From positions 62,001 through 126,000 of IMG/VR virus record IMGVR_UViG_3300040801_004532: a DNA stretch of 64,000 bases; one strand, 5' to 3'. The position numbers were made by a program, and so were the translations under genes. How positions within the stretch are numbered: the stretch's first letter is position 1; each line of letters starts with the position of its first letter. This document shows, piece after piece, positions 30,117 to 49,661 of this stretch. The notes under the pieces are model-generated. The model saw nothing but the letters and a program-made list of their open reading frames with translations, did not search any database and was not told where the DNA came from.

Positions 30117-30153
30117 AAATATGAGCTTGGGTTCTCCAATGCTCATATTTTTT
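30117..30153 (+). terminator. intrinsic (possibly bidirectional) terminator
   Basis: AAATATGAGC...GCTCATATTT hairpin plus T-run between convergent genes. Confidence 0.6.
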
Positions 30154-34945: not shown

Positions 34946-34978
34946 AAAGGAGATGTGAAATCTACATCTCCTTTTTTT
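34946..34978 (+). terminator. intrinsic terminator
   Basis: AAAGGAGATGT/ACATCTCCTTT hairpin plus T-run. Confidence 0.75.
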
Positions 34979-34979
34979 G

Positions 34980-35481: not shown

Positions 35482-35492
35482 TCTGGCCCCAT

Positions 35493-36167
35493 TTACTTAT
35501 CATATTTGACTCCATCAATTTCGTTAAGAATATCAAAAACACAATCTAAATCAAAATCAAAATTTAGTTTTTGTTCTTTTTTATATGCAAATGCTCGACT
35601 AGGATCAATCTTCTGATATTTTCTATTTTTTATTGTTCTCATTTTTTTGCGAAAATTAATATCTGGCTTTAGTCCACAATGCTTATAAATTTTAAATAGC
35701 ATATCATCAGGGTTTATTAACAAATCTTCATATTTAAATGTATATGTGTTATTCATCTTCATTATTTTCTTTGTAGCAACTGGAACAATCCCTTTATAGG
35801 TTCTTATTGGCTGTTCTAAATTTTTAATATATTTAAATTTATTTACATTTGAAACAGCAACATCATATGGATGCCTGATAATATGCAAGATTCGACTTTT
35901 ACTATTAAAAAATTTATTCCACTTTTCACAATATTTGATTATTGGAAATTTCCTTGCAGAAGGAAAATAGGGAACTTTTTCTCCCCAATTATCTTTGGTA
36001 ACATCAATGCCACGATTTTCAACAAATTGAATAAGGGTCTGCTTATCCTTGCAAATTTTCAAAAGAAAGTTTTCATGATAAATCCTTCTAACTTGTGGGT
36101 GTAATTGTAGCAATCGTCGAAGAAGAGTCGTTCCGCTCCTTTGGAAACCAACAACTAAAATATTCAT
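35493..36167 (-). CDS. sulfotransferase family protein
   Basis: VVGFQRSGTTLLRRLL..HP, WGEK.P, HIIRHPYD..VS, KYEDL. Confidence 0.85.
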   Translation of the reverse strand: MNILVVGFQRSGTTLLRRLLQLHPQVRRIYHENFLLKICKDKQTLIQFVENRGIDVTKDNWGEKVPYFPSARKFPIIKYCEKWNKFFNSKSRILHIIRHPYDVAVSNVNKFKYIKNLEQPIRTYKGIVPVATKKIMKMNNTYTFKYEDLLINPDDMLFKIYKHCGLKPDINFRKKMRTIKNRKYQKIDPSRAFAYKKEQKLNFDFDLDCVFDILNEIDGVKYDK

Positions 36168-37215
36168 TAATAACCCCCACCATCCGCCTAGCAGATTGTC
36201 CATCATTCAACATACGAAGTTGATCTGGATAATTGCTTTTGGGAGGATTCTCTAATAAATTTATTACAGATGAAAATATCTTATCGCTATCAGGTTGACA
36301 TAATCTAGTTGTACCATAATTAATCGTATATTCAATATTTGAAGTATCCCTAATTGCAACGCAGGGAACGTCCAAAATAGAAGTTTCTTGTTGAACCCCA
36401 TCAGAATCTGTTATAACACAGGATGCATTTTTCATTAACTTAATAAAATCAAAATATCCAAGAGGGTCTAAAACATCAATCATTCCTGTGTGTTTCCATA
36501 ATCCAAATTCATCAATCATCTTACTTGTTCTTGGGTGAACAGTAAATACAACATGATGTTTTTCAGACAGTTTCGATAGCCCGATTATAATCTCTTCTAA
36601 GTTATCTTTTATATCTGTATTCACAGGTCTATGTATTTCAACTAATAAAAATAGGTCGTCATCATAAATTGGAGTCCGTTCAGTATAAAATAAAAGATTA
36701 TCAATCATTGGATCTCCAACAAGGTGAATCTTTTTTGAATCAATCCCCTCATTTAATAAGTTCCTTCTATCTTGTGGAGAAATTGGAAACAACAAGTCTG
36801 ACACATGATCTGTTACAATTCGATTTATTTCTTCGGGCATTTTTTTATCAAAAGATCTCATTCCAGCTTCCTGGTGGGCAATTGGTATGTGTAATTTAGC
36901 TGCAACAAGAGCACAACCCATAGTTGAATTTACATCACCAACAACCAGAACCATATCAGGTCTTTCATCAAGACAAACTTTCTCAAATCGATCCATTATC
37001 TTTGCAGTTTGTTCACCATGATTTCCGGAACCAACTTCTAAGTGTTTGTATGGCTCTTTTAAACCAAACTCTTTAAAAAACACTTCGTTCATATTGTAGT
37101 CATAATGCTGCCCAGTATGGATAATTTCATACTCAAAATCTCGTAAAATAAGCTCTCGCTCAATCGCAGCTATTTTCATAAAGTTCGGTCTTGCTCCGCC
37201 AATCAAGTAAATCAT
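36088..37215 (-). CDS. wecB: UDP-N-acetylglucosamine 2-epimerase (WecB/WbpI-like)
   Basis: GARPNFMK, HTGQHYD, VGDVNST, HQEAGMRS, EEINR, TDSDGVQQE. Confidence 0.9.
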   Translation of the reverse strand: MIYLIGGARPNFMKIAAIERELILRDFEYEIIHTGQHYDYNMNEVFFKEFGLKEPYKHLEVGSGNHGEQTAKIMDRFEKVCLDERPDMVLVVGDVNSTMGCALVAAKLHIPIAHQEAGMRSFDKKMPEEINRIVTDHVSDLLFPISPQDRRNLLNEGIDSKKIHLVGDPMIDNLLFYTERTPIYDDDLFLLVEIHRPVNTDIKDNLEEIIIGLSKLSEKHHVVFTVHPRTSKMIDEFGLWKHTGMIDVLDPLGYFDFIKLMKNASCVITDSDGVQQETSILDVPCVAIRDTSNIEYTINYGTTRLCQPDSDKIFSSVINLLENPPKSNYPDQLRMLNDGQSARRMVGVINEYFSCWFPKERNDSSSTIATITPTS

Positions 37216-38075
37216 GACTTCTCCCTTATCTGTTGTACTAATGCAATGGCATTAAAAGAATCCTCGATACCATATCCACTACCGCTCAATATTCTCTTAT
37301 ATGACTCTGTATGGAGTTCAGAGAAGACATTATCAAATCGTACCTCCTCTCCATTTACAACCATACTTCTATAAAACTGTTGGTTTTTATCGGGAAGATC
37401 ATTTCTATCTAATGATAAATTCCACTCCACGTTTGCTAATTCCAATTCTAAAATTCCTGTTGATTTCATTTCATTTCTGTATGTTATTTCAAATGATTTT
37501 GGTTGACCAAATAACCATATAAGCATATCGAAAAAATGGATACCAATGTTTGTTTCTATCCCTCCCGACTGTCCCTCTTTTCCTTTCCAGCTTTGAAAAT
37601 ACCAGGGACCCCTTGGAGTTATATAATTCAATGTAACAAGATATTTTTTTCCTTTGTCAATCATATGCTTCAATAACTGGATGCTTGGATGTAATCTAAG
37701 CTGTAAGATTGAAAATACTCTCCTTGATGTTTGATTTTCAATCTTTCTTAATTGAACTAAATTTTCAGTTGTTGTGGTTAATGGTTTTTCACATATTACA
37801 TCAGCACCCAATCTCATTCCCAATTTACAATGTGCTTCATGTAAATAGTTTGGAGAGCATACAGCCAGATAATCCAAGTCTTCATATTTTATACAATGGC
37901 GATCAAAAGCTTCTTGTGTTTTAAAAAATTTACATTCTGGAAAATATTTATCAAGAATTCCAACCGAATCATTTGGATCAAATGCAACAACTAGATTGTT
38001 GCCAGTATCTTTTATTGCTTGCATATGCCTTGGTGCAACATAACCAGCAGCTCCTATTAGTCCAAAATTATACAT
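37212..38075 (-). CDS. Gfo/Idh/MocA oxidoreductase (WbpB/WlbA-like)
   Basis: GLIGAAGYVAPRHMQAI, CSPNYLH, ICEKP, SWKG...SGGI.TNIG.HFFD. Confidence 0.88.
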   Translation of the reverse strand: MYNFGLIGAAGYVAPRHMQAIKDTGNNLVVAFDPNDSVGILDKYFPECKFFKTQEAFDRHCIKYEDLDYLAVCSPNYLHEAHCKLGMRLGADVICEKPLTTTTENLVQLRKIENQTSRRVFSILQLRLHPSIQLLKHMIDKGKKYLVTLNYITPRGPWYFQSWKGKEGQSGGIETNIGIHFFDMLIWLFGQPKSFEITYRNEMKSTGILELELANVEWNLSLDRNDLPDKNQQFYRSMVVNGEEVRFDNVFSELHTESYKRILSGSGYGIEDSFNAIALVQQIREKS

Positions 38076-38241
38076 TTCTTATTTCCTCATGGTCAAATCC
38101 AAATATTAATGTATGGTATTCATTTAGTTTATCACATATTTCAAGGCAAACAGGTTTTAATAAACAAACTCTGCAAGGACATTCTAAAACCTTTCCATCC
38201 ATTTGAATATCACAAAATCCACTTCGTAGACAACAACTCAT
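38068..38241 (-). CDS. small Cys-motif protein (57 aa)
   Basis: manual translation ...CPCRVCLLKPVCLEICDKL. Confidence 0.55.
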   Translation of the reverse strand: MSCCLRSGFCDIQMDGKVLECPCRVCLLKPVCLEICDKLNEYHTLIFGFDHEEIRNV

Positions 38242-38726
38242 TATATAAACTCGTCTTCTGGAACTAAATATAAAATTTTGGCGGGGTTACCAACATAGAT
38301 ATATCCAGGTTCTGTACTTTTTGTTACTACAGAACCTGCACCAATTACACAATTTTGACCTATTTCAACTCCTGGAAGAATCGTTACTCTTGCACCAATA
38401 CGAGCGGCACGTCTAATAATTGGTGGTTCAGCAATATCCTTGTATGATCTTCTATATGCAATTTTTCTTGTATTGGTTGTCATACATCCCATTCCAACAA
38501 ATACTTCATCCTCAATAATACATCCCCTGCAAATATTTGAAAATTGCATTACTTGGGTGTCATTACCAATTTTAGCACCAGCAGCAATAAAACAATGTGC
38601 TCTAACATGCGAACGATTTCCAATAACTACACCACGCCTTATAACAGTATAATGACCAATATAACATCCATTCCCAATTTTTGCTCCTTGTTCAATAATC
38701 GCTGTTGACTCAATTAGTGTACTCAT
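38241..38726 (-). CDS. hexapeptide-repeat N-acetyltransferase (WbpD-like)
   Basis: left-handed beta-helix repeats; IGAGSVVTK...YVGNPAK. Confidence 0.85.
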   Translation of the reverse strand: MSTLIESTAIIEQGAKIGNGCYIGHYTVIRRGVVIGNRSHVRAHCFIAAGAKIGNDTQVMQFSNICRGCIIEDEVFVGMGCMTTNTRKIAYRRSYKDIAEPPIIRRAARIGARVTILPGVEIGQNCVIGAGSVVTKSTEPGYIYVGNPAKILYLVPEDEFI

Positions 38727-39226
38727 TTCTTTTCACCCCTAAATAAAAAAGCTCTTCTATTTAATTTTTTCGGGTTTTGAATTACATACCCACAATCAAA
38801 GTCAATATATGGAGAAAACCTTTCTTCCCACCCATCAAATTCAAACCATCTTACATGACCCTTATATGGGCTATTCGGAACAGAAATAATAACCTTTGTT
38901 CCAGCTCGTAAAGAATTTATAACATCTAAATCTTTCTCTATATGTTCTAAACATTGAAAGGAAACAAATGTTATAGCTCCTTTAAGCAAATATAAATTTT
39001 CAGTAATATCACAACATATAAAACTCATACCCGGTAATTTATTTTTGGCTTCTTTAATTTTATCCTTTAAAATATCAATTCCCATATAATTTCTAAATCC
39101 ATTCTTATGTAATAGCGATGCAAAATTGCCATTCGAGCAACCAAGTTCAACAATTAATTTATCATTCTTATCTAACCACGGAACAACCATTTTTCTCATT
39201 TCATCATGGTTGATTTTAAATATCAT
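38723..39226 (-). CDS. class I SAM-dependent methyltransferase
   Basis: IVELGCSNG...YMGIDI...CLEHI. Confidence 0.75.
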   Translation of the reverse strand: MIFKINHDEMRKMVVPWLDKNDKLIVELGCSNGNFASLLHKNGFRNYMGIDILKDKIKEAKNKLPGMSFICCDITENLYLLKGAITFVSFQCLEHIEKDLDVINSLRAGTKVIISVPNSPYKGHVRWFEFDGWEERFSPYIDFDCGYVIQNPKKLNRRAFLFRGEKK

Positions 39227-40149
39227 ATTCCAAACTCCTTTTGTATTATTTCGGTCATTTCTTTTACCCGTTTTTCACAACTATGATTTTTCCTAACAAA
39301 ATCCATTCCGTTTCTAGCGATTCTCTCTCGTTCCTTATCATGCTCCATATAATACTTTGCCTTTCTAACCAAATCTTTGGGGGTTTTATAAATAACCAAA
39401 TGTTCTCCATCTACGAACCCTAATTTAGTTAAATCCTCTGGTCTATCAGCAAGCAAAAACCCACCACATGCTAATGTTTCTGTATACCTCATACTCAATG
39501 ATTTAAATATGTTATTACTAGTAACGGTTATTTTACATTTGTTTATTGCGTTAATTAGAGCTTGATGGATCACTCTTTTTGTTATCAATCTAAAACCCGC
39601 TTTTTTCAAAGATTTCCTAACAACAGAACGATTGGGATAGATATCTTTCCTGGCTGTAAATGATGCAAGAATAATATCCTCTTTTTTTAACTTATTCTTT
39701 TTATAAATATTTGTATCAACAGAAAATGGCAGCATTCTAATTTTATCACAAACCTTATTTTCTTCTAATAGTCTAATAGCATTTGATGTTATCCCGAAAA
39801 CTAAATCATATTTATTTTCTTTGAAAAACTTATTTTGTTTTGGTATTCCAGCAGGTCGTCCATAATCAACTGTAATATGGACTTTTGGAATATTGATAAG
39901 ACCAAGACCATTAAACTCTTTTGAATATCTCCACCCGTAAGTAATAATCAAATCTGGATTTGAATTTTTATACTTTTTCTTGATAATTTGTTTGGCTGAC
40001 AACTTCTCGTTGAAGCCAGAATATCCCCTGCCATAATAAACAACATCATGCTGTCTACCAATTTCATTTCTAAATAATTGATGCCCCCAATTATATCTAC
40101 CAATTTGATTAGGGCTTAGTAACAATATCTTCATTTTATAGTCCACCAA
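39223..40149 (-). CDS. glycosyltransferase (CgeB/Glyco_trans_1_2-like)
   Basis: R.TETLACGGFLL...GEHLVIY...IARNG. Confidence 0.75.
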   Translation of the reverse strand: MVDYKMKILLLSPNQIGRYNWGHQLFRNEIGRQHDVVYYGRGYSGFNEKLSAKQIIKKKYKNSNPDLIITYGWRYSKEFNGLGLINIPKVHITVDYGRPAGIPKQNKFFKENKYDLVFGITSNAIRLLEENKVCDKIRMLPFSVDTNIYKKNKLKKEDIILASFTARKDIYPNRSVVRKSLKKAGFRLITKRVIHQALINAINKCKITVTSNNIFKSLSMRYTETLACGGFLLADRPEDLTKLGFVDGEHLVIYKTPKDLVRKAKYYMEHDKERERIARNGMDFVRKNHSCEKRVKEMTEIIQKEFGI

Positions 40150-40670
40150 ACATAAAAATCTTCAATGTGTAATTTATCTTTATTTATAAATTCATCAACT
40201 GCTTTCTTAACCCCTTTCCATTTACCACCATAATCATGACCAGAAATAATTCCGCCAGGTTTTACTTTTTTAGACCAAAGATATAGATTTTCTTTAACGT
40301 ATGGATAATCATGATTAGCATCAATAAATACCCAATCCAAAATTTCATCTTTAATAAATTCAATGGCTTCCACGCTAGTCATTTGATATACTTTAACTTT
40401 TTGTTTATAAGGTTTAATTTTAAAAAGGAATATCTCTTTTGCCTGATCCCATGTTTTAACTTTTTTATGCCCCGGTTTTCTATACATTTCTCCATCATAT
40501 TTTTCATATGATTCCCAAGGATCTACTGCATAATATCTTTTTATTCTGGGTAGATTTTTTAAAAGAGTTAATGTTGTATCCCCAGTATGAACTCCAACCT
40601 CACAACCTATCTCATGTCTTCTTTCTTTTAAAATTTCCAACAAAACATCAGAATGGGTTACAATTCCCAT
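40131..40670 (-). CDS. Methyltransf_24-like SAM methyltransferase
   Basis: EVGVHTG, WVFIDANHDY, GGIISGHDY. Confidence 0.8.
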   Translation of the reverse strand: MGIVTHSDVLLEILKERRHEIGCEVGVHTGDTTLTLLKNLPRIKRYYAVDPWESYEKYDGEMYRKPGHKKVKTWDQAKEIFLFKIKPYKQKVKVYQMTSVEAIEFIKDEILDWVFIDANHDYPYVKENLYLWSKKVKPGGIISGHDYGGKWKGVKKAVDEFINKDKLHIEDFYVWWTIK

Positions 40671-41254
40671 TTTAATTTCCTCGCAACAAAACCTTCAGCG
40701 TATACGTCAGGTTCATCTGTAATTAAAGAAGCCCAATAAGCATTCTTCTTTTTAACAATATCAATATTTATGGCACCACAATTTATCTGGCTTGCAAAAC
40801 AATTTAAAATTTCAAGTTTTTTATTGAAATCGACCACCGAAAAAACATTAGGGTGAAAATCATATGTAGATCCACTATCATAAAACAGCATTGTAATGTG
40901 ACGTTTCCTACCCACGGCTTGCGCAATTACTGATGATCTTCTATGATGTTGATGTGTATCATGCTCAAATGGAGCAAAAATTATATCTGGTTTGATTGGA
41001 TCAAGACACTCAATCATCTGTGAATCACTATCAGTTTCACCCAATAAATAAATGAATCTTCGATTGATTCCAATTACATTGGCAGCCTCATGCTGTTCAC
41101 TCAAACGATAACCAGGAGCTCCTGTCCTGTATTCATCTGTGTGGGTAATAGCATACCATATTTTATCGCCACGTTGAAAATGTTTCAAAATAGTTCCAGC
41201 ACACCCAATTTCTATATCATCATAATGTGAACCGATAGCTAATATTTTTTTCAT
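40658..41254 (-). CDS. PIG-L/LmbE family deacetylase
   Basis: GSHYDDIEIGCAG, R..E...A, DTHQHH. Confidence 0.8.
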   Translation of the reverse strand: MKKILAIGSHYDDIEIGCAGTILKHFQRGDKIWYAITHTDEYRTGAPGYRLSEQHEAANVIGINRRFIYLLGETDSDSQMIECLDPIKPDIIFAPFEHDTHQHHRRSSVIAQAVGRKRHITMLFYDSGSTYDFHPNVFSVVDFNKKLEILNCFASQINCGAINIDIVKKKNAYWASLITDEPDVYAEGFVARKLKWEL

Positions 41255-41255
41255 T

Positions 41256-42017
41256 TTAAAAATTCCACCCTTCTTCAACATCTCTCAAATATTTGGCAGG
41301 ACTTCCAACATAAATCCCTGATTTATCAATATTCTTAGTAACCACCGACCCCATACCAATAACAACATTATCAGTTATAGTAGTATAATGCTTTACCATA
41401 GACCCGGAACTGAACCAACAATTAACACCGGTTGTAACCCCACCATTAAAAATCACTCCAACTGCCAAAACTGACCCAGCCCCAATATTACAATTATGTC
41501 CAACGTTATTTTTTGCTCCCATTTTGCAACCAGAATTTATTACTGTGGATCCCATAGTTCCCCTATGAATTACAGAATAAGGACCAATATCAACATTGTC
41601 CCCAATTAAAATATTGCCCGTATGCTTGAATTGAATCTTTTGCCCATCCGGACAATGAACTAATTTTAATCCATCAACTTCCATAATAACAGTTTCATGA
41701 ATATTGCAATTCTTTCCAATAATTGGGGTATGCCTAATTCCCTTATTTATTTCATTATGAAAAATAGTAAACTCAAATTCAGGCCAATCGGTATAATAAA
41801 CCTTAGCATTTGGATAATAGTATTCACAAAATTCATTGACCAAACCTTTAATGGTGGTTGGAGCTATTAACCAAAAATCCTTTTCAGAATATATGTCAGA
41901 ATATATTGTGGGGAAATATTTAGTATCTCTTATAAATGTTACAGACCTATCTTTAATGTTTGTTATTGGACTAGTTCGATAATAGTTATCGAATTTTCTT
42001 AGCAGGGACTCCAGCAT
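41256..42017 (-). CDS. LpxD-like acyl/acetyltransferase
   Basis: HTGNILIGDNVDIG, IHRGT, GHNCNIG hexapeptide repeats. Confidence 0.75.
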   Translation of the reverse strand: MLESLLRKFDNYYRTSPITNIKDRSVTFIRDTKYFPTIYSDIYSEKDFWLIAPTTIKGLVNEFCEYYYPNAKVYYTDWPEFEFTIFHNEINKGIRHTPIIGKNCNIHETVIMEVDGLKLVHCPDGQKIQFKHTGNILIGDNVDIGPYSVIHRGTMGSTVINSGCKMGAKNNVGHNCNIGAGSVLAVGVIFNGGVTTGVNCWFSSGSMVKHYTTITDNVVIGMGSVVTKNIDKSGIYVGSPAKYLRDVEEGWNF

Positions 42018-43250: not shown

Positions 43251-44049
43251 ATTTTTTTCCTTCTCTGGTCAACTTTAATTCTAGCCTGCTAGTTTGAGAT
43301 TTGAATAAAAACGGATGAAATCTAGGGTGAATATCCCAATCAAGCCAATATTCAACTACGAATCCGATATCCAAGGATCGACCACCACATTCCTTAATCA
43401 TTCCACTATACACACGCCCAATCTCACCAGCAGCGACCAACCAAAGATCATAATCTTTTGCTGTATGTTTGATTATATCTATTACTTTATGATAACAACA
43501 ATCATAATGATTTTGCCACTGTCCCACTATTTCAACAACATTAACCTGTGGAAATAATTCTTTTATTTCGGGCCTTGCAGTTATTATAGAAACAGTTTTG
43601 TCCTTAATAAAATCAACTAAATTTCGTTTTCCATCTATTGAAACAACCATTAAACAATTGGATTCCGGATTACAATATGAGTCATTATCAAACTCAGCTC
43701 TTTCATATAAATCTTTCCAGTTCCTTAATTTTTGATCTGTTTCATAATTGATTGGTTTCCCAACTTTTTTTATCCTTGGCCAAAACTCTCCTGTATAGTA
43801 TACTTCTGGTGTATCAATAAAGTCCGCCCTTCTTGCATAGTAGCCCCACATCTCATACAAATCTATTATCTTATGGTGGGGTATCCCTTCCTTTTTTAAA
43901 ATGATACCAAGCTGTTCTAAATCTTTATAAAGAATCGAATGTATATATTTAATACCACCATCTCCAAATCTAATATGCGAAAACGGCAAATTATACCTAA
44001 TACAATTTTCAAGCTTATTCAAAATTTCTTCAACCTTAAAAATTTTCAT
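43234..44049 (-). CDS. GT-D fold-like glycosyltransferase
   Basis: SHIRFGDG, LVAAGEIG, LDIG. Confidence 0.55.
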   Translation of the reverse strand: MKIFKVEEILNKLENCIRYNLPFSHIRFGDGGIKYIHSILYKDLEQLGIILKKEGIPHHKIIDLYEMWGYYARRADFIDTPEVYYTGEFWPRIKKVGKPINYETDQKLRNWKDLYERAEFDNDSYCNPESNCLMVVSIDGKRNLVDFIKDKTVSIITARPEIKELFPQVNVVEIVGQWQNHYDCCYHKVIDIIKHTAKDYDLWLVAAGEIGRVYSGMIKECGGRSLDIGFVVEYWLDWDIHPRFHPFLFKSQTSRLELKLTREGKKYEPYI

Positions 44050-45035
44050 CGAAGTGTTTCCAACAACTCTATGAATTTTGACATATTGTGTTTTCTGTTT
44101 CCCAAAGAAACAATATATGATCTTGAATTTTTTCCTAATTCTTTTCTTAGATTTTCATCCGTAATTAATTTCTCAGTATTTAAAACAAATGCATCTAAGT
44201 TATTTTCAGAGATCAATCCATTATGATTATGGATCAAATAATCTGTTCCGGCCAGTTCTGCATCAGTTCCAACAACAGGGCATCCAGCCATCATTGCTTC
44301 GGCAGGAGGCATATGTAGTCCTTCTTGGGTTGCAGGAGAAAGCCAAATATCAATTTCATTATAGAAATCATTCTTTTCTTTCATTGTTGGTTGTTTTAAA
44401 TATTTATCATATAGTTTTGGTGGATTCTCTGCACCCAACAAATAAAGTTTTACAGGATAATCTTTTGATTTAAGTTTTGAGTAGGTACTGAACAGCCACT
44501 CAACTCGTTTAATTTTCGAGTGTTTCTTATGATAAAGACCACCAATAACAACATATTCATTTTTCTTTTTTTTCACTGGATAAATTTCATCTAGATCATA
44601 ACCAGGCTTAACAATATGTGAGTTAGTTTTATACCCCAAAAGTTTTTGTTGAAGACCAAGGCTATTTACAAATTTTATCGTTGGGGCTTTTAAAATTTTA
44701 TTAACTATCTGACTTTCGGGCATTTGCCACGTTTCCCATGCCCTAATCCAATGACATTTTATTCCGCATGCTTTTGGGGAAGCAACAGTTGACAAAACAG
44801 ATTTATAACCAGTTGCGATAATAAAATCTCCGCTTGGTGGTTTAAAATTCTTACCCGTAACAACATGCTCAAACTTTACATCAGACCATGTATGCATATT
44901 CTTAAATGAGTCAATAAATATAACTTCGTGACCCAAATCAACAAGGGCATTTCCTGATCTTATAAGAGTTAAAGATCCGCCGTTATTCCCCAGTCCAACT
45001 TTTCTTAAATCAAAAATTATTCTCATATATCTCAA
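44046..45035 (-). CDS. glycosyltransferase family 4
   Basis: NNGGS, QEGLHMPPAEAMMAGCPVV. Confidence 0.85.
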   Translation of the reverse strand: MRYMRIIFDLRKVGLGNNGGSLTLIRSGNALVDLGHEVIFIDSFKNMHTWSDVKFEHVVTGKNFKPPSGDFIIATGYKSVLSTVASPKACGIKCHWIRAWETWQMPESQIVNKILKAPTIKFVNSLGLQQKLLGYKTNSHIVKPGYDLDEIYPVKKKKNEYVVIGGLYHKKHSKIKRVEWLFSTYSKLKSKDYPVKLYLLGAENPPKLYDKYLKQPTMKEKNDFYNEIDIWLSPATQEGLHMPPAEAMMAGCPVVGTDAELAGTDYLIHNHNGLISENNLDAFVLNTEKLITDENLRKELGKNSRSYIVSLGNRKHNMSKFIELLETLR

Positions 45036-45783
45036 TTCCTTCCTCAGCAGAACTACATCTTATAACTGGCGTATTTAATGGATTTATCAAGTGAATTTGA
45101 TCATCCGACAACTCTTCGTTTACAGCAATTAATGGCGTTTTTAATAACAATGCTAATCTTGAAATATCACCTTTCAAATTACCAACTACAAATTCACTCC
45201 GTTTTATTGCATCGAGATAACAGCCCAATGTTGAATCTTGTATGCCGCTATAAACATTAGAAACTTGACAGAAAAAGTCACTCCCAGTTTTTATAAAATA
45301 TTTATCTGAACTAAGGTCACAATTAACTGATATAGAATCCACAAAAATGATTCTTTCTTTTTCATGAAAAATCTTATCAACAATTTGTATATTGCCATTT
45401 CTTGGCTGAAAATCATAATCCATCTTTGACCTTGGAAATTGCCATTTAACTTTATAGTAAAACGATGTAATATCAGGATATATTATGTCCTTAATTTTAA
45501 ATCTAGTTTTGAATTTATTTATAAATGCACCAAGAAGTTTATTAAAGTCTTCGCCTGTTATATTCTCCTTTTTGAAGCAACAGACATTATTCTCATCTAA
45601 TCTTAGTGGAACAAACACATCTGCATAAATCCCATATAAATCAAAATTATGTTGGCGAGTAAAAATAACAAATGTATCATGTGGCGATTTCTTTTTAAGG
45701 TAAATAATATAGGGCGCAAAATGAAAATATTCCCATGATAACTCGCCAACAAAGGGACCTACAAGAACCACCTGTCGTTTCAT
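45010..45783 (-). CDS. hypothetical protein, paralog of 46071..46976
   Basis: GPFVGELSWEYFHFAP vs GPFVGEMYWEAARFAP; shared DLYG.YAD..PLR. Confidence 0.65.
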   Translation of the reverse strand: MKRQVVLVGPFVGELSWEYFHFAPYIIYLKKKSPHDTFVIFTRQHNFDLYGIYADVFVPLRLDENNVCCFKKENITGEDFNKLLGAFINKFKTRFKIKDIIYPDITSFYYKVKWQFPRSKMDYDFQPRNGNIQIVDKIFHEKERIIFVDSISVNCDLSSDKYFIKTGSDFFCQVSNVYSGIQDSTLGCYLDAIKRSEFVVGNLKGDISRLALLLKTPLIAVNEELSDDQIHLINPLNTPVIRCSSAEEGIEIYENNF

Positions 45784-45792
45784 ATTAATCCT

Positions 45793-46071
45793 TTAAACTG
45801 GTTGAATTGTACTATCTTCGTTTGGATCTGAATCTGGTTCTGGTTTTGGATTATCGGTATCTTTCATAACTCGTTCAAGTTCTCTAATTTTATTCTTAAG
45901 TGCATCATTCTCATTCTCAAGTCTTGTAAGTTCAGACTCAAACCCATTCATGATATATTGAAATTTTTTTATTGGAAATTCTTGATACATTGGTTGATAA
46001 CTAGCCTCAATTAATGTTCTTTTTAAATAGTCAACAACTCGTTTGTTTGTACTAAGCCAAATGTTTTGCAT
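45793..46071 (-). CDS. small coiled-coil protein
   Basis: ORF track. Confidence 0.55.
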   Translation of the reverse strand: MQNIWLSTNKRVVDYLKRTLIEASYQPMYQEFPIKKFQYIMNGFESELTRLENENDALKNKIRELERVMKDTDNPKPEPDSDPNEDSTIQPV

Positions 46072-46976
46072 TACCTTTTCTCCTTCTTTTTCAATAGTTT
46101 TTTAAATTCTGGAAAAATCTTATCTACAGAAATATCATATTGCTTATTCTCGATGAAGGTAATAGGAGTGTTTCTAATATTATAGGTTTTTGTGTGGAGT
46201 TGTTTTTGGCATCCAAACTCTAAAACTTCAACTCCATATAATAATGATATATTTGGAATGGCGCTTTGAGAACCAAAAGTAAAAACCGATTTCTCCATTA
46301 CTACAAGTAGCAATCCTATTAATGAAGATGATTTTCCAACTGTAATATCATTCATATCATAGAATCTTTTCTTTTCATCGGGGACATATTCTCCCGGCTT
46401 TCCACAAATAATAAAACGAAAATTATCATTTAAAAATTTATCAGCAGCCAGTCGATCATAGAAGGCTAACCAATTCCCCCAATTTCTCTTAAATCCTTTC
46501 CTAAACCTTGGGGCCAAAATAACCAGTGGTTTGTTGTCTGATATATAACTCTCGACTAACTCATAATTTTCTTTTCTTGGTTTATATTTAAAGATCATAT
46601 TTTGTTTTAGATATTGATTTTTATTCAAAAAATTCTTCTTAGAAACATCTGGATAAATATGTTTTATAACATTAAACCTTTTGCTATAACGATTTTTAAA
46701 CTTACTAGCTAATTTATGATAATTCTCTATTGGGTAATTATTAAGCCGAAAACAATTTGGTTGTTTATTTTGATAATCTCCTTCAATTCTAAGGGGTATT
46801 AAAATGTCTGCATAACAACCATATAAATCAAATCTTTCTTCTCTCGTCAAAATAATAAATTTTACATTTTTTCCTTTATATGTATTCTTTTTATAAAATG
46901 GTAACATAGGTGCAAACCTTGCGGCTTCCCAATACATTTCGCCAACAAAGGGGCCAAACAAAACAGCTTTTTCCAT
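46071..46976 (-). CDS. putative GT9-like glycosyltransferase
   Basis: GPFVGE N-terminus; GSQSAIPNISL. Confidence 0.5.
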   Translation of the reverse strand: MEKAVLFGPFVGEMYWEAARFAPMLPFYKKNTYKGKNVKFIILTREERFDLYGCYADILIPLRIEGDYQNKQPNCFRLNNYPIENYHKLASKFKNRYSKRFNVIKHIYPDVSKKNFLNKNQYLKQNMIFKYKPRKENYELVESYISDNKPLVILAPRFRKGFKRNWGNWLAFYDRLAADKFLNDNFRFIICGKPGEYVPDEKKRFYDMNDITVGKSSSLIGLLLVVMEKSVFTFGSQSAIPNISLLYGVEVLEFGCQKQLHTKTYNIRNTPITFIENKQYDISVDKIFPEFKKLLKKKEKR

Positions 46977-46978
46977 AA

Positions 46979-47812
46979 TTACCAGTCCCTGATAACAGCC
47001 CTATCATCTTTAATTTTATTATAAAACTCCTCAAACTTCATGCTCGCCAATCTTTTTTCAGCGTCTTCAAATTTGATTAGATTATCTAATTTTTTATCAT
47101 TCTTTTGTCTAGTCAAAACATTACATACAGATCCAGCATGTTTTCCACAATGGTATCTTAGATTAGTACTTAATCCAAGGATGTAATGTTTCCCCTTTGA
47201 TGATTGGTCTAATAGTTTCCAATACATCTGGTCATGTTTTTTATCATGCCCAACCAATTGTTTTAAATTAAGAAACCCAACATCACGAAAAAAATCTGGT
47301 CTAACAGACCAAAATCCCGACCCTCCCAACTTCCCTGTTTTTCCCGATAACTCAGTACTTATTTGAATTGCTGGTTCGTTTCGATATTTAATTCCGCCTG
47401 GCACTTGCCCAATAACCTTAATATGATTTAGTTTGTTTTTGTGAATATATTTCCAAGCAGATAAGAGCTTCTTATCCCATTCTGGCGCAACAATTATATC
47501 ATTGTCCAACATAAGCAAAAAAGCATATGAGTCTTTCTTCGGATCCTGTTCATGTTGCAAACCAAAAAAATTACAAGTTGATGCTTTACTAAACGCACCA
47601 AATGTAGAATCAGTTGAAGTAAATGTAATCTGTGAGATTAACCCTTTAGAATATAACTTATGAAAATATGCAAAATGATCTTCTAATAGATGATTTGTTT
47701 GGTTATCGTAAACGTAAATTTTATGCGGCAACGATGAATGAACCTTTAAGGCATGGATACACTTCCTGGTGATTTCTAAACGATTTCTAACGCTTAAGAA
47801 AATTTTAACCAT
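46979..47812 (-). CDS. glycosyltransferase family 2
   Basis: VRNRL.IT..C, YVYDN, LMLDND. Confidence 0.75.
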   Translation of the reverse strand: MVKIFLSVRNRLEITRKCIHALKVHSSLPHKIYVYDNQTNHLLEDHFAYFHKLYSKGLISQITFTSTDSTFGAFSKASTCNFFGLQHEQDPKKDSYAFLLMLDNDIIVAPEWDKKLLSAWKYIHKNKLNHIKVIGQVPGGIKYRNEPAIQISTELSGKTGKLGGSGFWSVRPDFFRDVGFLNLKQLVGHDKKHDQMYWKLLDQSSKGKHYILGLSTNLRYHCGKHAGSVCNVLTRQKNDKKLDNLIKFEDAEKRLASMKFEEFYNKIKDDRAVIRDW

Positions 47813-49076
47813 CCTTAGATAACTCCTCAATATTATCAATAGTTTCTTTTATATTAATTTGGTCATAACATGGGCTGTATCCATCAGGACCTGCTTCTGG
47901 ACATGGAGTATGCCCATGAATAAAACATGGAACACAATGTCTTTGAGCATCAACCCAACGAGCTTTTGGGTAAGTTTTTAATCTGATATGACCAGGAAAT
48001 GGTCCGTATATTCCATAACACGGAACATCAAGAGATGCGGCAATATGATTTAGAGCAGAGTCGGTTGCAATCACACATTTAGCAAGTGAAGCAACAGCAA
48101 TTGAAAAATCTAGAGATAATGAATGTTGACAAAAATTAAACACTCGATGTTTATTTTTAACTGCTGAAATAAAATTATCAACATTATCTTTTTGCCTGGG
48201 GTTATCTGTGATAAGAACATCATGACCACGATCAGTAAGTTCATCAATTATGTTAATCCAAAATTCAGGACGAGGGGTTCTAATGGGAGAACTGGCTCTA
48301 AGTTGAGTTAACATAAACCCTTTTGGTTGTACGCCCCACTCTTGTAATTTCTCAAGACAAAATTCAACTTTATCATCTTTTGGTTTTTGTGATGGAACCA
48401 ATTTATCATTGGGTAAATCAAGTCCTAACCATTCACTAAATAAATTGTATGCATTTACCTGTTCTGCTAATTTACATCTTTCAATAACTCCCTCAAACAA
48501 TGCATGATAATCAGCTCTATTCAACTCAGTCAAATTAAACGGCAAATCCACAACGCGATCAACACATTCCCAAGTTTCAACCATTGATTGGTATTGCGGA
48601 CCACAACAAAAATTAATAGTACATGAAGGATATTTTTCTTTTAGATAGGATAAATTCGGTTGGATAAACAAAAGGTCTCCGATACCTCCTGTTCTAAATA
48701 CAAGGAGTGTTTTGTTTGTTAAATCCTGCCCGATATACGGAGTATATAAATTTTTGAATTGAACTTTGGCTGGCTTTAAAAATTTTCTGCCTCCTCTTGG
48801 TTCCCGATGTAGTTGTTGATAAACACCAAGACCCATAACATAATTATTGCCCTTCTTTAATTTCTGCTTTTTAAAAAAATTCTGAATAAATGATAAATTT
48901 TTAACCGCATGAGCAATAACAATATTCGGTGGCGAGTTTCGTAATTCTTTTAGATCGCTAACAATTTTAGTGGATTCGCCTACCAAACCCAACTCTCTCA
49001 ATTGCATACTTGTTATCTGTCTAAATTCTCTTGTTGGTACTTCGGACTCCCATTTTATCCCCGTATTCAAATCCAT
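47805..49076 (-). CDS. glycosyltransferase family 9 (heptosyltransferase-like)
   Basis: RTGGIGDLL, IATDSALNHIAA, GIYGPF, C.PC...C. Confidence 0.8.
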   Translation of the reverse strand: MDLNTGIKWESEVPTREFRQITSMQLRELGLVGESTKIVSDLKELRNSPPNIVIAHAVKNLSFIQNFFKKQKLKKGNNYVMGLGVYQQLHREPRGGRKFLKPAKVQFKNLYTPYIGQDLTNKTLLVFRTGGIGDLLFIQPNLSYLKEKYPSCTINFCCGPQYQSMVETWECVDRVVDLPFNLTELNRADYHALFEGVIERCKLAEQVNAYNLFSEWLGLDLPNDKLVPSQKPKDDKVEFCLEKLQEWGVQPKGFMLTQLRASSPIRTPRPEFWINIIDELTDRGHDVLITDNPRQKDNVDNFISAVKNKHRVFNFCQHSLSLDFSIAVASLAKCVIATDSALNHIAASLDVPCYGIYGPFPGHIRLKTYPKARWVDAQRHCVPCFIHGHTPCPEAGPDGYSPCYDQINIKETIDNIEELSKDG

Positions 49077-49101
49077 CCTGATTTCCTTTCAAAATTTTTC
49101 G

Positions 49102-49659: not shown

Positions 49660-49661
49660 AA

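What the first reader, a model, noticed from the sequence alone, without database searches (positions are those of the whole stretch)
35493..49076. 13.6-kb glycan biosynthesis and decoration cluster in a phage
Seen: at least six glycosyltransferases (GT2, GT4, GT9, GT-D-like, CgeB-like), WecB/WbpI, WbpB-like, three acyltransferases, a PIG-L deacetylase, two methyltransferases and a sulfotransferase, directly downstream of probable virion genes on the same strand. Established: WbpB, WbpD and WbpI belong to the 2,3-diacetamido-uronic acid pathway; its WbpA and WbpE steps are not in the window. Inference: the phage builds a complex sulfated/methylated glycan for its own virion, as giant eukaryotic viruses do, or for host-surface or DNA masking.
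Basis: partly seen in the sequence, partly recalled or inferred. Interest (0 to 1): 0.65.

Follow-up and report, generated by a model that had tools for sequence, protein, structure and literature searches.

The report
Conserved glycan-building cluster in jumbo phage
An uncultivated jumbo phage carries 18 back-to-back genes for soluble enzymes that build and decorate a complex acidic sugar chain; related phages keep the same glycosyltransferase core but swap the decoration genes, and what the sugar is attached to is still unknown.

Summary
Window 35493-49076 (minus strand) holds 18 contiguous, mostly overlapping ORFs. They comprise about 8 glycosyltransferases (GT9, a GT2-like GT-A, two divergent GT9-like paralogs, GT4, GT-D-like, a possible GT-A, CgeB-like), a clear WbpB orthologue, a WbpD-class N-acetyltransferase and a WecB/WbpI-type epimerase. 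There are also two further acyltransferases, a PIG-L deacetylase, two methyltransferases and a sulfotransferase with intact PAPS motifs.

The contig is a 248-kb IMG/VR jumbo phage with two multisubunit RNA polymerase sets, not a host misassembly. The same gene order recurs in more than 20 independent assemblies, two of them complete with terminal repeats.

New here: the cluster has a vertically inherited core (invariant triad GT9, GT2-like, GT9-like A; usually also GT9-like B, GT4, GT-D) and a swappable decoration cassette. Four cassette types were seen, and all add anionic groups (uronic acid, sulfate or pyruvate) plus methyl.

No cluster protein has a convincing transmembrane helix. The contig shows no flippase- or polymerase-like membrane protein, no aminotransferase (WbpE) and no WbpA.

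Best reading (about 0.4): cytoplasmic glycosylation of a phage-made, probably virion, acceptor. Rivals are host LPS-core remodelling (about 0.3) and a DNA glycan (about 0.1). The acceptor is not shown.

The parts
47805..49076 (-). GT9-family glycosyltransferase (423 aa), first gene of the invariant core triad
   Evidence: PF01075 at 40.6 bits, cut-off 22. Heptosyltransferase NCBIfam models score only 49 bits or less, far under their cut-offs. Weak match to WaaF 1psw, E 7e-6. 46-76% identical in all related loci.
46979..47839 (-). GT-A (GT2-like) glycosyltransferase; the real start is probably the ATG at residue 10 (about 47812)
   Evidence: No Pfam hit. The ESM Atlas model aligns with PF00535 clusters at TM 0.60-0.66, feature scores 0.96-0.99, and the Atlas record starts at residue 10. 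Present in all related loci.
46071..46976 (-). Divergent GT9-like GT-B glycosyltransferase, paralog A (N-terminal motif GPFVGE)
   Evidence: AF2 model pLDDT 93. Foldseek top hits are WaaC 2h1f/2gt1, the GT9 protein 3tov and WaaF 1psw, E 1e-8 to 4e-6. 512 metagenomic homologues; the best 120 are 59-74% identical and none has a Pfam domain.
45793..46071 (-). Small conserved protein (92 aa) between the two paralogs, function unknown
   Evidence: No Pfam family. tblastn finds a homologue in 5 of 23 related loci (30-42% identity). Gene calls in further relatives show an unannotated 79-92-aa ORF at the same position.
45010..45783 (-). Divergent GT9-like glycosyltransferase, paralog B
   Evidence: 27% identical to paralog A, E 3e-31. 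The fold is inferred from that homology. Present in most but not all relatives.
44046..45035 (-). GT4 (GT-B) glycosyltransferase
   Evidence: PF13692 at 55 bits and PF00534 at 52 bits. Conserved in nearly all relatives.
43234..44049 (-). GT-D-like glycosyltransferase (weak assignment)
   Evidence: PF22882 at 28.4 bits, cut-off 27. The same family is listed, weak or faint, for the orthologues in five relatives.
42504..43250 (-). Conserved unknown (248 aa), possibly a GT-A; last gene of the core
   Evidence: No Pfam or PHROG hit. Nearest Atlas clusters are viral hypotheticals; in one of them 22% of members carry PF00535. This is a lead only.
41986..42519 (-). Hexapeptide-repeat acetyltransferase (177 aa); first gene of the variable cassette
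   Evidence: PF00132 at 87 bits. Present only in type I cassettes: L010, L017, L027.
41256..42017 (-). LpxD/PglD-like sugar N-acyltransferase (253 aa)
   Evidence: TIGR01853 lpxD at 103 bits, below its cut-off. The LbH domain matches LpxD 3eh0 at E 7e-15, then PglD.
40658..41281 (-). PIG-L/LmbE-family GlcNAc de-N-acetylase
   Evidence: PF02585 at 45 bits. Matches LmbE-related 2ixd at E 4e-12 and BshB 6p2t at E 4e-10. It lies next to the LpxD-like acyltransferase, which suggests N-acetyl to N-acyl exchange (inference).
40131..40670 (-). Methyltransf_24 SAM-dependent methyltransferase
   Evidence: PF13578 at 65 bits.
39223..40149 (-). CgeB-like Glyco_trans_1_2 glycosyltransferase
   Evidence: PF13524 at 85 bits. 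Belongs to the cassette, not the core.
38723..39226 (-). Class I SAM methyltransferase (167 aa)
   Evidence: PF13649, PF13489 and PF08241.
38241..38726 (-). WbpD/WlbB-class N-acetyltransferase for nucleotide-linked 3-amino sugars
   Evidence: PF00132 at 98 bits. Matches 7s43 at E 4e-24, WxcM-like 4mzu, WlbB 3mqg at E 4e-17, and QdtC.
37212..38075 (-). WbpB orthologue (UDP-GlcNAcA 3-dehydrogenase type)
   Evidence: Matches 3oa2 WbpB at E 6e-90 (305 bits, full length) and 3o9z at E 3e-81; the next family member scores 54 bits. Nearest cellular homologues are 50-56% identical. No orthologue-level match among GenBank phages.
36088..37215 (-). Non-hydrolysing UDP-N-acetylhexosamine 2-epimerase (WecB/WbpI type)
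   Evidence: PF02350 at E 2e-94. TIGR00236 at 272 bits, cut-off 210.
35493..36206 (-). PAPS-dependent sulfotransferase; the likely start is M14 at 36167, overlapping the WecB 3' end by about 80 nt
   Evidence: PF13469 at 60 bits and PF00685 at 44 bits. Motifs GFQRSGTT (5'-PSB) and IIRHPYDVAVS (3'-PB) are intact, and an SD-like GGTGGGGG precedes M14. Absent from the close relative G001 and present in L017.
30143..31159 (-). Outlying GT1-family glycosyltransferase, beyond the stated range, probably associated
   Evidence: PF00534 at 28.7 bits, cut-off 26.4. Orthologues sit in the same downstream position in L018, L027 and L035.
53073..54299 (-). Context: conserved 408-aa protein, tentatively a virion neck/tail-terminator-like protein, always upstream of the GT core
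   Evidence: AF2 model pLDDT 62. Foldseek: phiKZ neck chain 9xps_w at E 3e-4, and PBS1, RSF1 and FBKp24 jumbo-phage proteins at E 3e-8 to 1e-5. VIA: Z 5.8 to 9xps_w and Z 4.0 to T4 gp15; the C-terminal domain scores Z 6-7.5 to tail/neck adaptor domains. All Z values are below the level that would be firm.

Best explanation
The cluster is a phage-encoded glycosylation line that works entirely in the cytoplasm. A conserved set of soluble glycosyltransferases builds an oligosaccharide backbone on an acceptor that the phage itself supplies, most likely one or more virion proteins. That set is always GT9, a GT2-like enzyme and GT9-like A, and usually also GT9-like B, GT4, GT-D-like and a possible further GT-A.

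An exchangeable downstream cassette then supplies lineage-specific residues and decorations. In this phage the cassette would do four things:
- make a 2,3-diacetamido-uronic-acid-type donor from host UDP-GlcNAc-derived intermediates (WbpB, WbpD-like, WecB/WbpI), with the host providing the 6-dehydrogenase and aminotransferase steps;
- add a residue with the CgeB-like GT;
- swap an N-acetyl group for another acyl group (PIG-L deacetylase followed by the LpxD-like N-acyltransferase);
- O-acetylate, methylate twice, and sulfate using host PAPS.

The product would be an anionic, methylated glycan displayed by the phage. Its variable outer part changes between lineages, as surface antigens do.

Shown: the gene content, the soluble nature of the enzymes, the core-plus-cassette architecture and its conservation. 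Inferred: the order of reactions, the donor sugars and, above all, the acceptor.
For: 1. All enzyme families are present and intact.
2. No cluster protein has a convincing transmembrane segment. No protein in the 248-kb contig has four or more hydrophobic segments, so nothing resembling a flippase, polymerase, ligase or polytopic priming transferase is encoded.
3. The GT core behaves like a core phage gene set.
   - It keeps the same order in 23 related loci from independent assemblies, including complete DTR genomes of 277 and 312 kb.
   - Identities of 42-76% are similar to the phage RNA polymerase subunit at 58-73% and to replication proteins.
   - Paralog A has 512 metagenomic homologues.
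   - By contrast, host-surface clusters in cyanophages are described as sporadic (PMC7824862).
4. The core always follows a conserved block that includes a tentatively neck-like virion protein, on the same strand. Terminator-like sites in 34000-53900, which covers the cluster and the genes up to the 3' end of the neck-like gene, are no more frequent than chance.
5. Decoration cassettes are swapped between lineages on the core tree: 8 changes against a minimum of 4, and types I and III are each split by well-supported branches. This is expected for an exposed, selected surface.
6. The four cassette types converge on anionic groups plus methylation.
   - Sulfotransferases of two Pfam families occur, and an APS kinase occurs in type II.
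   - A pyruvyl transferase occurs in complete genome G003.
   - Uronic acid plus sulfate occur in this phage.
7. From my own knowledge, cytoplasmic protein O-glycosylation systems (serine-rich-repeat adhesins: GT4, GT-D/DUF1792 and GT-A enzymes; autotransporter heptosyltransferases with a GT9-like fold) and giant-virus glycan clusters use the same kinds of soluble enzymes.
8. Candidate acceptors exist. Three tail-fibre proteins carry long collagen-like Gly-Ser/Thr repeats.
Against: - No acceptor is identified, and nothing shows that a glycan is on the virion.
- The cluster sits between the tRNA/nucleotide-metabolism region and the replication genes, not inside the recognisable tail module. The capsid genes were not found in this 79%-complete contig.
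- Characterised GT9 enzymes and the WbpB/D/I pathway belong to LPS biosynthesis.
- Nine of ten glycan-acting transferases are strongly basic (pI 9.1-9.9). That is typical of peripheral-membrane or DNA-binding transferases, although it also suits an anionic glycan or an acidic protein substrate.
- Collagen-like fibres were not detected in the complete relative G003, so they cannot be the universal acceptor.
- The temporal class of the genes could not be established. An enriched upstream motif, TTTAGAACAAAATA, is not placed directly before the core.
- The neck-like assignment rests on a model of only pLDDT 62.
Confidence: 0.4

Rival explanations
1. Host envelope remodelling. The soluble GTs act at the inner face of the membrane on the host's lipid A-Kdo core or another lipid-linked intermediate. 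The host's own MsbA, flippases or ligase export the altered glycolipid. This changes the cell surface to block superinfection or to stop progeny adsorbing to debris.
For: - Three GT9-type enzymes plus a GT4 resemble an LPS inner-core toolkit. Such enzymes need no TM segments, priming transferase, flippase or polymerase of their own, which fits.
- WbpB/WbpD/WbpI make an LPS-typical sugar (established for the P. aeruginosa and Bordetella wbp/wlb loci).
- The missing WbpA and WbpE steps imply reliance on a host that already runs such pathways.
- The transferases are basic, as peripheral-membrane GTs are.
- Precedent: jumbo cyanophage LPS/capsule clusters have been interpreted as superinfection exclusion (PMC7824862).
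Against: - The core is universal and strongly conserved in the clade, not sporadic as such accessory clusters are.
- The GT9 gene scores far below every heptosyltransferase equivalog cut-off (49 against 134.6 bits), and the paralogs are recognisable only by fold.
- In a lytic infection, newly made LPS would not replace receptors already in the outer membrane (inference).
- The host, and even its Gram type, is unknown. Frequent Shine-Dalgarno use argues against Bacteroidota, the taxa with the most similar WbpB.
Confidence: 0.3
2. DNA hypermodification. The GTs glycosylate a modified base, such as a hydroxymethyl-pyrimidine, in phage DNA. The cassette enzymes decorate that DNA glycan to evade restriction and other DNA-targeting defences.
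For: - The contig encodes a very divergent thymidylate-synthase-family protein that could be a pyrimidine hydroxymethylase.
- A dCMP deaminase, a MazG-like enzyme, a deoxyribosyltransferase-like protein and a QueC-like protein lie just downstream of the cluster on the same strand.
- The transferases are basic.
- Universal conservation with variable decoration would fit an arms race.
- Phage GTs that put diverse glycans on DNA are known (bioRxiv 10.1101/2023.12.21.572611).
Against: - The TS-like gene is about 53 kb from the cluster, not adjacent as in known DNA-glycan clusters.
- It was not found in the complete relative G004, which keeps the core triad.
- Paralog A's best structural matches are GT9 enzymes, not T4 beta-GT.
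- About 8 GTs plus acyl, methyl and sulfate transfer far exceed any DNA glycan I know of. A bulky anionic glycan on many bases would be hard to package (inference).
Confidence: 0.1
3. Soluble product. The cluster makes a free glycoside or glycosylated small molecule, such as a thiol cofactor-like compound, a signal or an antibiotic-like metabolite, that alters host physiology during infection.
For: - The best curated-model hit of the PIG-L enzyme is the bacillithiol deacetylase BshB1 (65 bits), and it matches BshB 6p2t.
- The GT4 has a weak BshA hit.
- Jumbo cyanophages have been proposed to carry sugar-derived secondary-metabolite clusters (PMC7824862).
Against: - All these hits are far below the curated cut-offs.
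- Eight glycosyltransferases are many for a small molecule.
- No core scaffold-forming enzyme (NRPS, PKS, BshC-like) was seen in the cluster.
- The PIG-L gene belongs to the variable cassette, not to the conserved core.
Confidence: 0.05
4. Artefact. The cluster is host DNA joined to a phage contig by misassembly, or a recent inert insertion.
For: The enzymes have bacterial-type families. The nearest cellular WbpB homologues are 50-56% identical.
Against: - Phage genes flank the cluster on both sides.
- GC is uniform.
- The gene order is the same in 23 independent loci, including two DTR-complete genomes.
- Phage-to-phage identities (65-76% for WbpB) exceed phage-to-cell identities.
- All ORFs are intact and tightly coupled.
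Confidence: 0.01

Closest known systems
Glycan biosynthesis gene clusters of giant viruses (Mimivirus/Megavirus fibril glycans, chlorovirus capsid glycans); from my own knowledge, not tested here
   Same: - Virus-encoded nucleotide-sugar enzymes work with several soluble GTs and need no host secretory or export machinery.
- Cluster content differs between lineages.
- The clusters include UDP-GlcNAc 2-epimerase-type enzymes, N-acetyltransferases and pyruvyl/methyl decorations. A pyruvyl transferase is present in relative G003.
   Different: - The host here is a bacterium and the virus is a tailed phage.
- There is no detectable sequence kinship of the core GTs with anything annotated.
- The core is built on GT9-like enzymes.
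- Sulfation is prominent.
- The virion location of the glycan is not shown here.
LPS/capsule-type gene clusters of jumbo cyanophages (described in PMC7824862)
   Same: They are clusters of paralogous GTs plus sugar-modifying enzymes in large phages, polymorphic between relatives, with function inferred only.
   Different: - Those clusters are sporadic and include sugar kinases and nucleotidyltransferases.
- Here a GT core is universal in the clade, and only the distal cassette is polymorphic.
- tblastn of the GT9, paralog A or sulfotransferase finds nothing in 50,697 GenBank phage records.
Mycobacteriophage virion glycosylation (Freeman et al. 2023, as cited in PMC12619734)
   Same: Phage-encoded GTs modify phage structural proteins in the cytoplasm.
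   Different: Those systems have about two GTs placed beside the structural genes, and the glycans are demonstrated. Here there are about 8 GTs plus 10 modifying enzymes, placed apart from the recognisable tail module, and nothing is demonstrated.
WbpA-B-E-D-I / WlbA-D pathway to UDP-ManNAc3NAcA (P. aeruginosa O5, Bordetella LPS)
   Same: There is a clear WbpB orthologue, a WbpD-class acetyltransferase and a WecB/WbpI-type epimerase, adjacent and in the pathway's usual company.
   Different: WbpA and WbpE were not found anywhere in the contig. No Wzx, Wzy or priming transferase is present. The genes belong to a swappable cassette, not to the conserved core.
Phage DNA-glycosylation clusters (T-even glucosyl-hmC; 5mYOX/TS-associated GT clusters, bioRxiv 10.1101/2023.12.21.572611)
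   Same: Phage-encoded GT-A and GT-B enzymes with variable glycans. A TS-family gene exists in the genome.
   Different: The TS-family gene is not adjacent to the cluster. There are far more enzymes here. Paralog A's fold matches GT9, not T4 beta-GT.

Membership tests
UDP-2,3-diacetamido-2,3-dideoxy-uronic acid pathway (WbpA/B/E/D/I) | WbpB: NAD-dependent 3-dehydrogenase of the GFO/IDH/MocA fold | tested here: met
   37212-38075 matches WbpB 3oa2 at E 6e-90 over its full length; other family members score 54 bits or less.
UDP-2,3-diacetamido-2,3-dideoxy-uronic acid pathway (WbpA/B/E/D/I) | WbpE: PLP-dependent DegT-type 3-aminotransferase | tested here: not met
   PF01041 has no match in the 248-kb contig, while the control genomes all ring. 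The contig is 79% complete, so absence from the full genome is not proven. Type I relatives L010 and L017 also lack it inside the cluster.
UDP-2,3-diacetamido-2,3-dideoxy-uronic acid pathway (WbpA/B/E/D/I) | WbpA: UDP-GlcNAc 6-dehydrogenase | tested here: not met
   PF03721 has no match in the contig.
UDP-2,3-diacetamido-2,3-dideoxy-uronic acid pathway (WbpA/B/E/D/I) | WbpD N-acetyltransferase and WbpI 2-epimerase | tested here: inconclusive
   38241-38726 falls in the 3-amino-sugar N-acetyltransferase class (WlbB 3mqg at E 4e-17). 36088-37215 passes the WecB equivalog cut-off. Substrate specificity (uronic acid or not) cannot be read from these scores.
Wzx/Wzy- or ABC-transporter-dependent surface polysaccharide locus | Own priming phosphoglycosyl transferase, flippase/polymerase or transporter (polytopic membrane proteins) | tested here: not met
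   No cluster protein has a convincing TM segment. No protein of the contig has four or more hydrophobic segments. This is a hydropathy scan only, so a monotopic PglC-type enzyme could be missed.
LPS inner-core heptosyltransferases (CAZy GT9: WaaC/WaaF/WaaQ) | GT9 domain and GT-B fold | tested here: met
   PF01075 is over its cut-off for 47805-49076. Paralog A's model matches WaaC and WaaF best.
LPS inner-core heptosyltransferases (CAZy GT9: WaaC/WaaF/WaaQ) | Orthology to a characterised heptosyltransferase (curated equivalog score) | tested here: not met
   The best score is TIGR02195 at 49 bits against a cut-off of 134.6.
LPS inner-core heptosyltransferases (CAZy GT9: WaaC/WaaF/WaaQ) | ADP-heptose donor and Kdo2-lipid A acceptor | not testable with these tools
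   This needs enzyme assays. ADP-heptose synthesis genes were not searched for.
Virus-encoded virion glycosylation systems | Virus encodes the GTs, and some sugar-nucleotide enzymes, as soluble cytoplasmic proteins | tested here: met
Virus-encoded virion glycosylation systems | Glycan covalently attached to a virion protein | not testable with these tools
   No isolate is available.
Virus-encoded virion glycosylation systems | Linkage to structural genes | tested here: inconclusive
   A neck-like protein lies 4 kb upstream on the same strand in all relatives, but the model is of low confidence and non-structural genes intervene.
Phage DNA-glycosylation clusters | GT adjacent to a pyrimidine hydroxymethylase (TS family) or a 5mYOX with its methyltransferase | tested here: not met
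   The TS-family gene is about 53 kb away and was not found in the complete relative G004. 5mYOX was not searched for.
PAPS-dependent sulfotransferases | 5'-PSB and 3'-PB PAPS-binding motifs | tested here: met
   GFQRSGTT and IIRHPYDVAVS are present. PF13469 and PF00685 are over their cut-offs. The motif definitions come from my own knowledge.

The most novel reading that the evidence does not exclude
A widespread, uncultivated clade of RNA-polymerase-encoding jumbo phages carries, as a hallmark of the lineage, its own cytoplasmic machinery for coating a phage component with a complex anionic glycan. The component is most likely the virion. The glycan is sulfated, pyruvylated or uronic-acid-bearing, and methylated. 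Its outer part is exchanged between lineages by cassette swapping, much as bacteria exchange O-antigen genes. If so, this would be, to my knowledge, the first sulfated glycan made by a bacteriophage and a prokaryotic-virus counterpart of giant-virus glycan coats.
Probability: 0.3. Interest if true: 0.8.

Novelty: new variant of a known kind. Interest (0 to 1): 0.62.

Why it matters
Virus-made glycans are established for giant eukaryotic viruses and, in simple form, for mycobacteriophages. For large phages, glycan clusters have only been inferred and are usually ascribed to host-surface changes.

Here a large glycosyltransferase core is part of the conserved gene set of a whole clade found in many metagenomes. 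The decoration genes are modular and repeatedly converge on negative charge. Sulfation recurs, and some relatives encode an APS kinase.

If the glycan coats the virion, it bears on particle stability, adsorption and stickiness in aquatic environments, and on recognition by hosts and grazers. If it instead goes to LPS or DNA, it is a new large-scale takeover or anti-defence device.

In either case the divergent GT9-like paralogs (512 homologues, no family annotation) and the cassette enzymes are a defined, testable set of new carbohydrate-active enzymes.

Tried and rejected
- **Alternative genetic code.** A CTA-anticodon suppressor tRNA is present. Reading TAG as Gln only adds short extensions to a few ORFs and joins none, and TAG ends 44 of 335 ORFs. 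Table 11 was kept.
- **Close relatives among cultured phages.** Megablast of the cluster found nothing in 50,697 records. tblastn of GT9, paralog A and the sulfotransferase also found nothing. WbpB gave only weak GFO-family hits. A single-protein IMG/VR scan with GT9 found nothing. The paralog query and then its alignment did find relatives.
- **PHROGs.** No family matched any GT of the cluster.
- **Moraphages (PMC12619734).** They also have core GTs, but they lack RNA polymerase genes, so they are a different lineage.
- **Temporal class from promoters.** The motif TTTAGAACAAAATA is enriched 17-fold upstream of about 20 genes. It stands before both structural-region and other genes and not directly before the GT core, so it says nothing on timing. 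Sigma-70-like and terminator-like sites are at chance level.
- **Collagen-like Gly-Ser/Thr tail fibres as universal acceptor.** They were found in G002 and G004 but not in complete G003. They are kept only as one candidate.
- **Host identification.**
  - WbpB's nearest cellular homologues are spread over many phyla at 50-56% identity.
  - Shine-Dalgarno use (58% of ORFs against 9.5% by chance) argues only against hosts that do not use SD.
- **Records behind L013, L015, L016 and L018.** They are not held for whole-record searches.
- **Upstream conserved proteins.** The 642-aa and 408-aa proteins have no sequence-level match in PDB or GenBank phages.
- **Not used.** Complex prediction and the large representative-protein search were not used, because no claim here rests on a specific protein pair or on absence of relatives.

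Full report
**What is there.** The window is bases 62001-126000 of a single 248,136-bp IMG/VR viral contig. It has no terminal repeats and CheckV puts it at 79% complete. GC is 35% and table 11 gives 93% coding.

The stated interval 35493-49076 coincides exactly with 18 consecutive minus-strand ORFs. Most overlap their neighbour by a few bases, many have Shine-Dalgarno sequences, and none has a convincing transmembrane segment. Terminator-like sites are no more frequent than in shuffled sequence. GC across the cluster (0.32-0.35) is like the rest of the window.

**Family assignments, in transcription order** (Pfam; NCBIfam):
- GT9, 47805-49076.
- A 286-aa protein with no Pfam hit. The Atlas model aligns with GT2 clusters at TM 0.60-0.66.
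- Two paralogs, 46071-46976 and 45010-45783 (27% identity, E 3e-31), separated by a small 92-aa gene.
- GT4, 44046-45035.
- A weak GT-D-like, 43234-44049.
- An unknown, 42504-43250, possibly a GT-A.
- Two hexapeptide acyltransferases. The second is closest to the LpxD LbH domain.
- A PIG-L/LmbE deacetylase.
- A Methyltransf_24 enzyme.
- A CgeB-like GT.
- A SAM methyltransferase.
- A third hexapeptide transferase, which falls in the 3-amino-sugar N-acetyltransferase class with WlbB and QdtC.
- A GFO/IDH/MocA oxidoreductase that is a clear WbpB orthologue (E 6e-90 to 3oa2 over its full length).
- WecB, which passes the equivalog cut-off.
- A sulfotransferase. Both PAPS-binding motifs are intact. 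Its likely start, M14 at 36167, overlaps the end of WecB.

I modelled paralog A from an alignment of 27 homologues (pLDDT 93). Its best structural matches are the GT9 heptosyltransferases WaaC, 3tov and WaaF. The cluster therefore holds about eight glycosyltransferases. A ninth, of the GT1 family, lies downstream at 30143-31159.

The GT2 call rests on structure rather than on Pfam, and PF00535 is not found anywhere in the contig.

**It is a phage, not a misassembly.** The contig encodes:
- two sets of multisubunit RNA polymerase beta/beta' genes
- a family B DNA polymerase
- topoisomerase II
- an SbcC-like nuclease
- a Dda-like helicase
- a clamp loader
- a baseplate wedge protein
- collagen-like tail fibres
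- 18 tRNAs and a tmRNA

A 39.9-kb IMG/VR contig (G001) is collinear with window 30143-71091 at 42-84% amino-acid identity, cluster included. A word search with paralog A found 512 homologues. The best 120 are 59-74% identical, about 300 aa long and carry no Pfam domain; they lie on contigs of up to 309 kb.

Gene tables for five of those contigs and 17 IMG/VR loci found with the alignment show the same order. Two of the IMG/VR records are complete genomes with direct terminal repeats, 277 and 312 kb. All five large relatives tested carry both RNA polymerase sets.

**Architecture: a conserved core and a swappable cassette.** I ran tblastn with the window's proteins, and with the annotated proteins of three relatives, against 23 loci. 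This gives a constant left part:
- a 642-aa, a 213-aa and a 408-aa protein, then a NUDIX hydrolase;
- usually a volactin-type actin homologue;
- GT9, GT2-like and GT9-like A in every locus;
- GT9-like B, GT4, GT-D-like and the 248-aa unknown in most.

To the right, before a conserved 232-aa protein and a papain-like peptidase, the content differs:
- **Type I** (this window, L010, L017, partly L027): the acyltransferase/PIG-L/methyltransferase/CgeB/WbpD/WbpB/WecB set, with or without the sulfotransferase. G001 lacks the sulfotransferase and L017 has it.
- **Type II** (L013, L018 and others): a sulfotransferase, methyltransferases, and in individual loci NAD-dependent epimerase/dehydratases and an APS kinase.
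- **Type III** (L015, L016): a second GT4, unknowns, a sulfotransferase of either Pfam family, a GT2 and methyltransferases.
- **A fourth type**, in the complete genome G003: a polysaccharide pyruvyl transferase, a B12-binding radical SAM enzyme and two methyltransferases.
- **No cassette**: L020 and L035.
- **Triad only**: the complete genome G004 keeps only the triad, followed by a homing endonuclease.

On a tree of the concatenated triad the cassette types are not monophyletic. Type I is split by supported branches. One type III locus is sister to the window's pair, while the other sits inside a type II group. In all there are eight changes against a minimum of four.

So the core is inherited vertically and the cassette is exchanged. 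Every cassette adds negative charge (uronic acid, sulfate or pyruvate) and methyl groups.

**What the cassette of this phage probably does.** WbpB, a WbpD-class transferase and a WecB/WbpI-type epimerase are three of the five steps to UDP-ManNAc3NAcA (established for the P. aeruginosa and Bordetella loci). The 6-dehydrogenase and the aminotransferase were not found in the 248 kb, nor inside the type I clusters of relatives. The host must supply them, the missing 21% of the genome holds them, or the enzymes work on a related substrate.

The adjacent PIG-L deacetylase and LpxD-like N-acyltransferase suggest exchange of an N-acetyl group for another acyl group (inference from adjacency and from the LpxC/LpxD logic). 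No APS kinase is present here, so PAPS would come from the host.

**What the glycan is for.** This is inference. For a phage-made, probably virion, acceptor:
- The core GTs are as conserved as the polymerase and replication genes and are universal in the clade. Host-surface clusters of cyanophages are described as sporadic (PMC7824862).
- Nothing that could prime, flip, polymerise or ligate a lipid-linked glycan is encoded.
- The core always follows, on the same strand, a block that contains a tentatively neck- or terminator-like protein (model pLDDT 62). It matches the phiKZ neck chain 9xps_w and PBS1 and RSF1 proteins, with VIA Z of 4-7.5 to neck and tail adaptor proteins.
- Modular, charge-conferring outer decoration is what one expects of an exposed structure.
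- The enzyme mix recalls cytoplasmic protein O-glycosylation systems and giant-virus clusters (my own knowledge).
- Collagen-like Gly-Ser/Thr repeats in three tail fibres are possible acceptors. They were not found in one complete relative.

Against this reading, and for remodelling of the host LPS core:
- GT9 enzymes and the Wbp pathway are LPS enzymes.
- Core assembly needs only peripheral soluble GTs.
- Nine of ten glycan-acting transferases are strongly basic, whereas the nucleotide-sugar enzymes are acidic.

A DNA glycan is kept as a minor rival. The genome has a divergent thymidylate-synthase-family gene and a nucleotide-metabolism block next to the cluster. However, that gene is about 53 kb away, was not found in a complete relative that keeps the triad, and the enzyme count is far beyond known DNA glycans.

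I put the three readings at about 0.4, 0.3 and 0.1.

**Comparison with what is known.** The closest analogues are:
- giant-virus glycan clusters
- cyanophage LPS-type clusters
- mycobacteriophage virion glycosylation
- the Wbp/Wlb pathway

The cluster is not a member of a Wzx/Wzy-type locus, because it has no membrane components. It is not an orthologous LPS heptosyltransferase set, because the scores are far below the equivalog cut-offs. It is not a complete Wbp pathway.

I found no paper describing this clade's cluster or a phage sulfotransferase in this context. A brine-pool preprint lists a viral sulfotransferase and a GT2 among highly expressed viral genes together with capsid and terminase, but it has no link to this clade.

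**Verdict.** This is a new variant of a known kind (virus-encoded glycan synthesis). What sets it apart is the clade-wide GT9-based core, the cassette swapping and the recurrent sulfation. Interest is 0.62. The acceptor remains the open question.

**Limits.**
- No expression or read data could be obtained.
- The host is unknown.
- The capsid genes were not located in this incomplete contig.
- Several assignments are weak: GT-D-like, the 248-aa protein and the neck-like protein.

Noticed in passing
window 50037-51086 (-): A full-length volactin-family actin homologue (PF25216, E 2e-75) lies just upstream of the cluster. It is 63-84% conserved in most relatives. Among GenBank phages, tblastn finds it only in two uncultured huge phages, LR745208.1 and LR756511.1. 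None of the 10 listed papers (of 17) that mention volactin concerns phages, judging by their titles. In a phage with two multisubunit RNA polymerases it might take the place of the PhuZ tubulin of nucleus-forming phages (speculation).
   Followed up: partly
window 1367-20768 (+): An array of 18 tRNAs and a tmRNA (6211-6561, RF00023 at 141 bits, tag peptide ADDYYTEVALAA). It includes a CTA-anticodon (amber suppressor-type) tRNA at 4784-4860. TAG nevertheless behaves as an ordinary stop (44 of 335 ORFs), and reading it as Gln only adds short extensions to a few ORFs and joins none.
   Followed up: partly
window 56868-57224: A 357-bp non-coding stretch upstream of the conserved 642-aa gene. It holds two copies of a unit GGTTCTTAGGG..ATATCGAGCGCTAATATAT..ATATTAGC and a GC-rich, stem-like segment. 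No Rfam family matches at gathering score. It could be a regulatory region or a small RNA.
   Followed up: no
whole contig; e.g. window 34168, 12462, 58559: The motif TTTAGAACAAAATA is enriched about 17-fold in upstream regions and stands 15-90 nt before about 20 genes. It contains AACA, reminiscent (from memory) of the AR9 non-virion RNA polymerase late promoter. It is a candidate phage promoter, but its temporal class is unknown.
   Followed up: partly
window 22000-30000 (-) and L019:1471-2271 (G000 43678-44478): A nucleotide-metabolism block lies next to the cluster: QueC-like 28555-29460, dCMP deaminase 27659-28198, nucleoside 2-deoxyribosyltransferase-like 25322-25825 and MazG-like 23898-24635. 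A very divergent thymidylate-synthase-family protein lies elsewhere in the contig. Together they suggest modified DNA bases.
   Followed up: partly
L001:233-1747, 1757-3763, 4594-6120 (-): Three tail-fibre proteins have long collagen-like (Gly-Ser/Thr-Ser/Thr)n repeats. Similar repeats occur in relatives G002 and G004 but were not found in complete G003.
   Followed up: partly
window 51096-51920 (-); L021, L029, L030, L033: HNH or GIY-YIG homing endonuclease genes are inserted at different points in and around the conserved block in different relatives, for example between GT9 and GT2-like in L021, L029 and L033. This points to mobile-element traffic that could help cassette exchange.
   Followed up: no
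window 31499-32428 and 32416-33435 (-): A papain-family (C1) cysteine peptidase and an ATP-dependent DNA-ligase-like protein lie just downstream of the cluster. The peptidase is conserved at this position in relatives. The ligase-like gene is absent from G001.
   Followed up: no
window 38067-38096 (-): A near-consensus sigma-70-like promoter (TTGACC, 18-nt spacer, TATAAT; 11 of 12 matches) sits in the only sizeable gap of the cluster (165 bp), upstream of WbpB-WecB-sulfotransferase. Promoter-like sites overall are at chance frequency.
   Followed up: no
NCBI GCA_048882605.1 JBHLRM010000001.1 (L015) and protein P0045: Related 255-kb and 36-kb phage contigs are deposited inside MAGs labelled Candidatus Thorarchaeota and Candidatus Glassbacteria. 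These are probably binning errors, since the window's phage, a relative, encodes a bacterial-type tmRNA.
   Followed up: no
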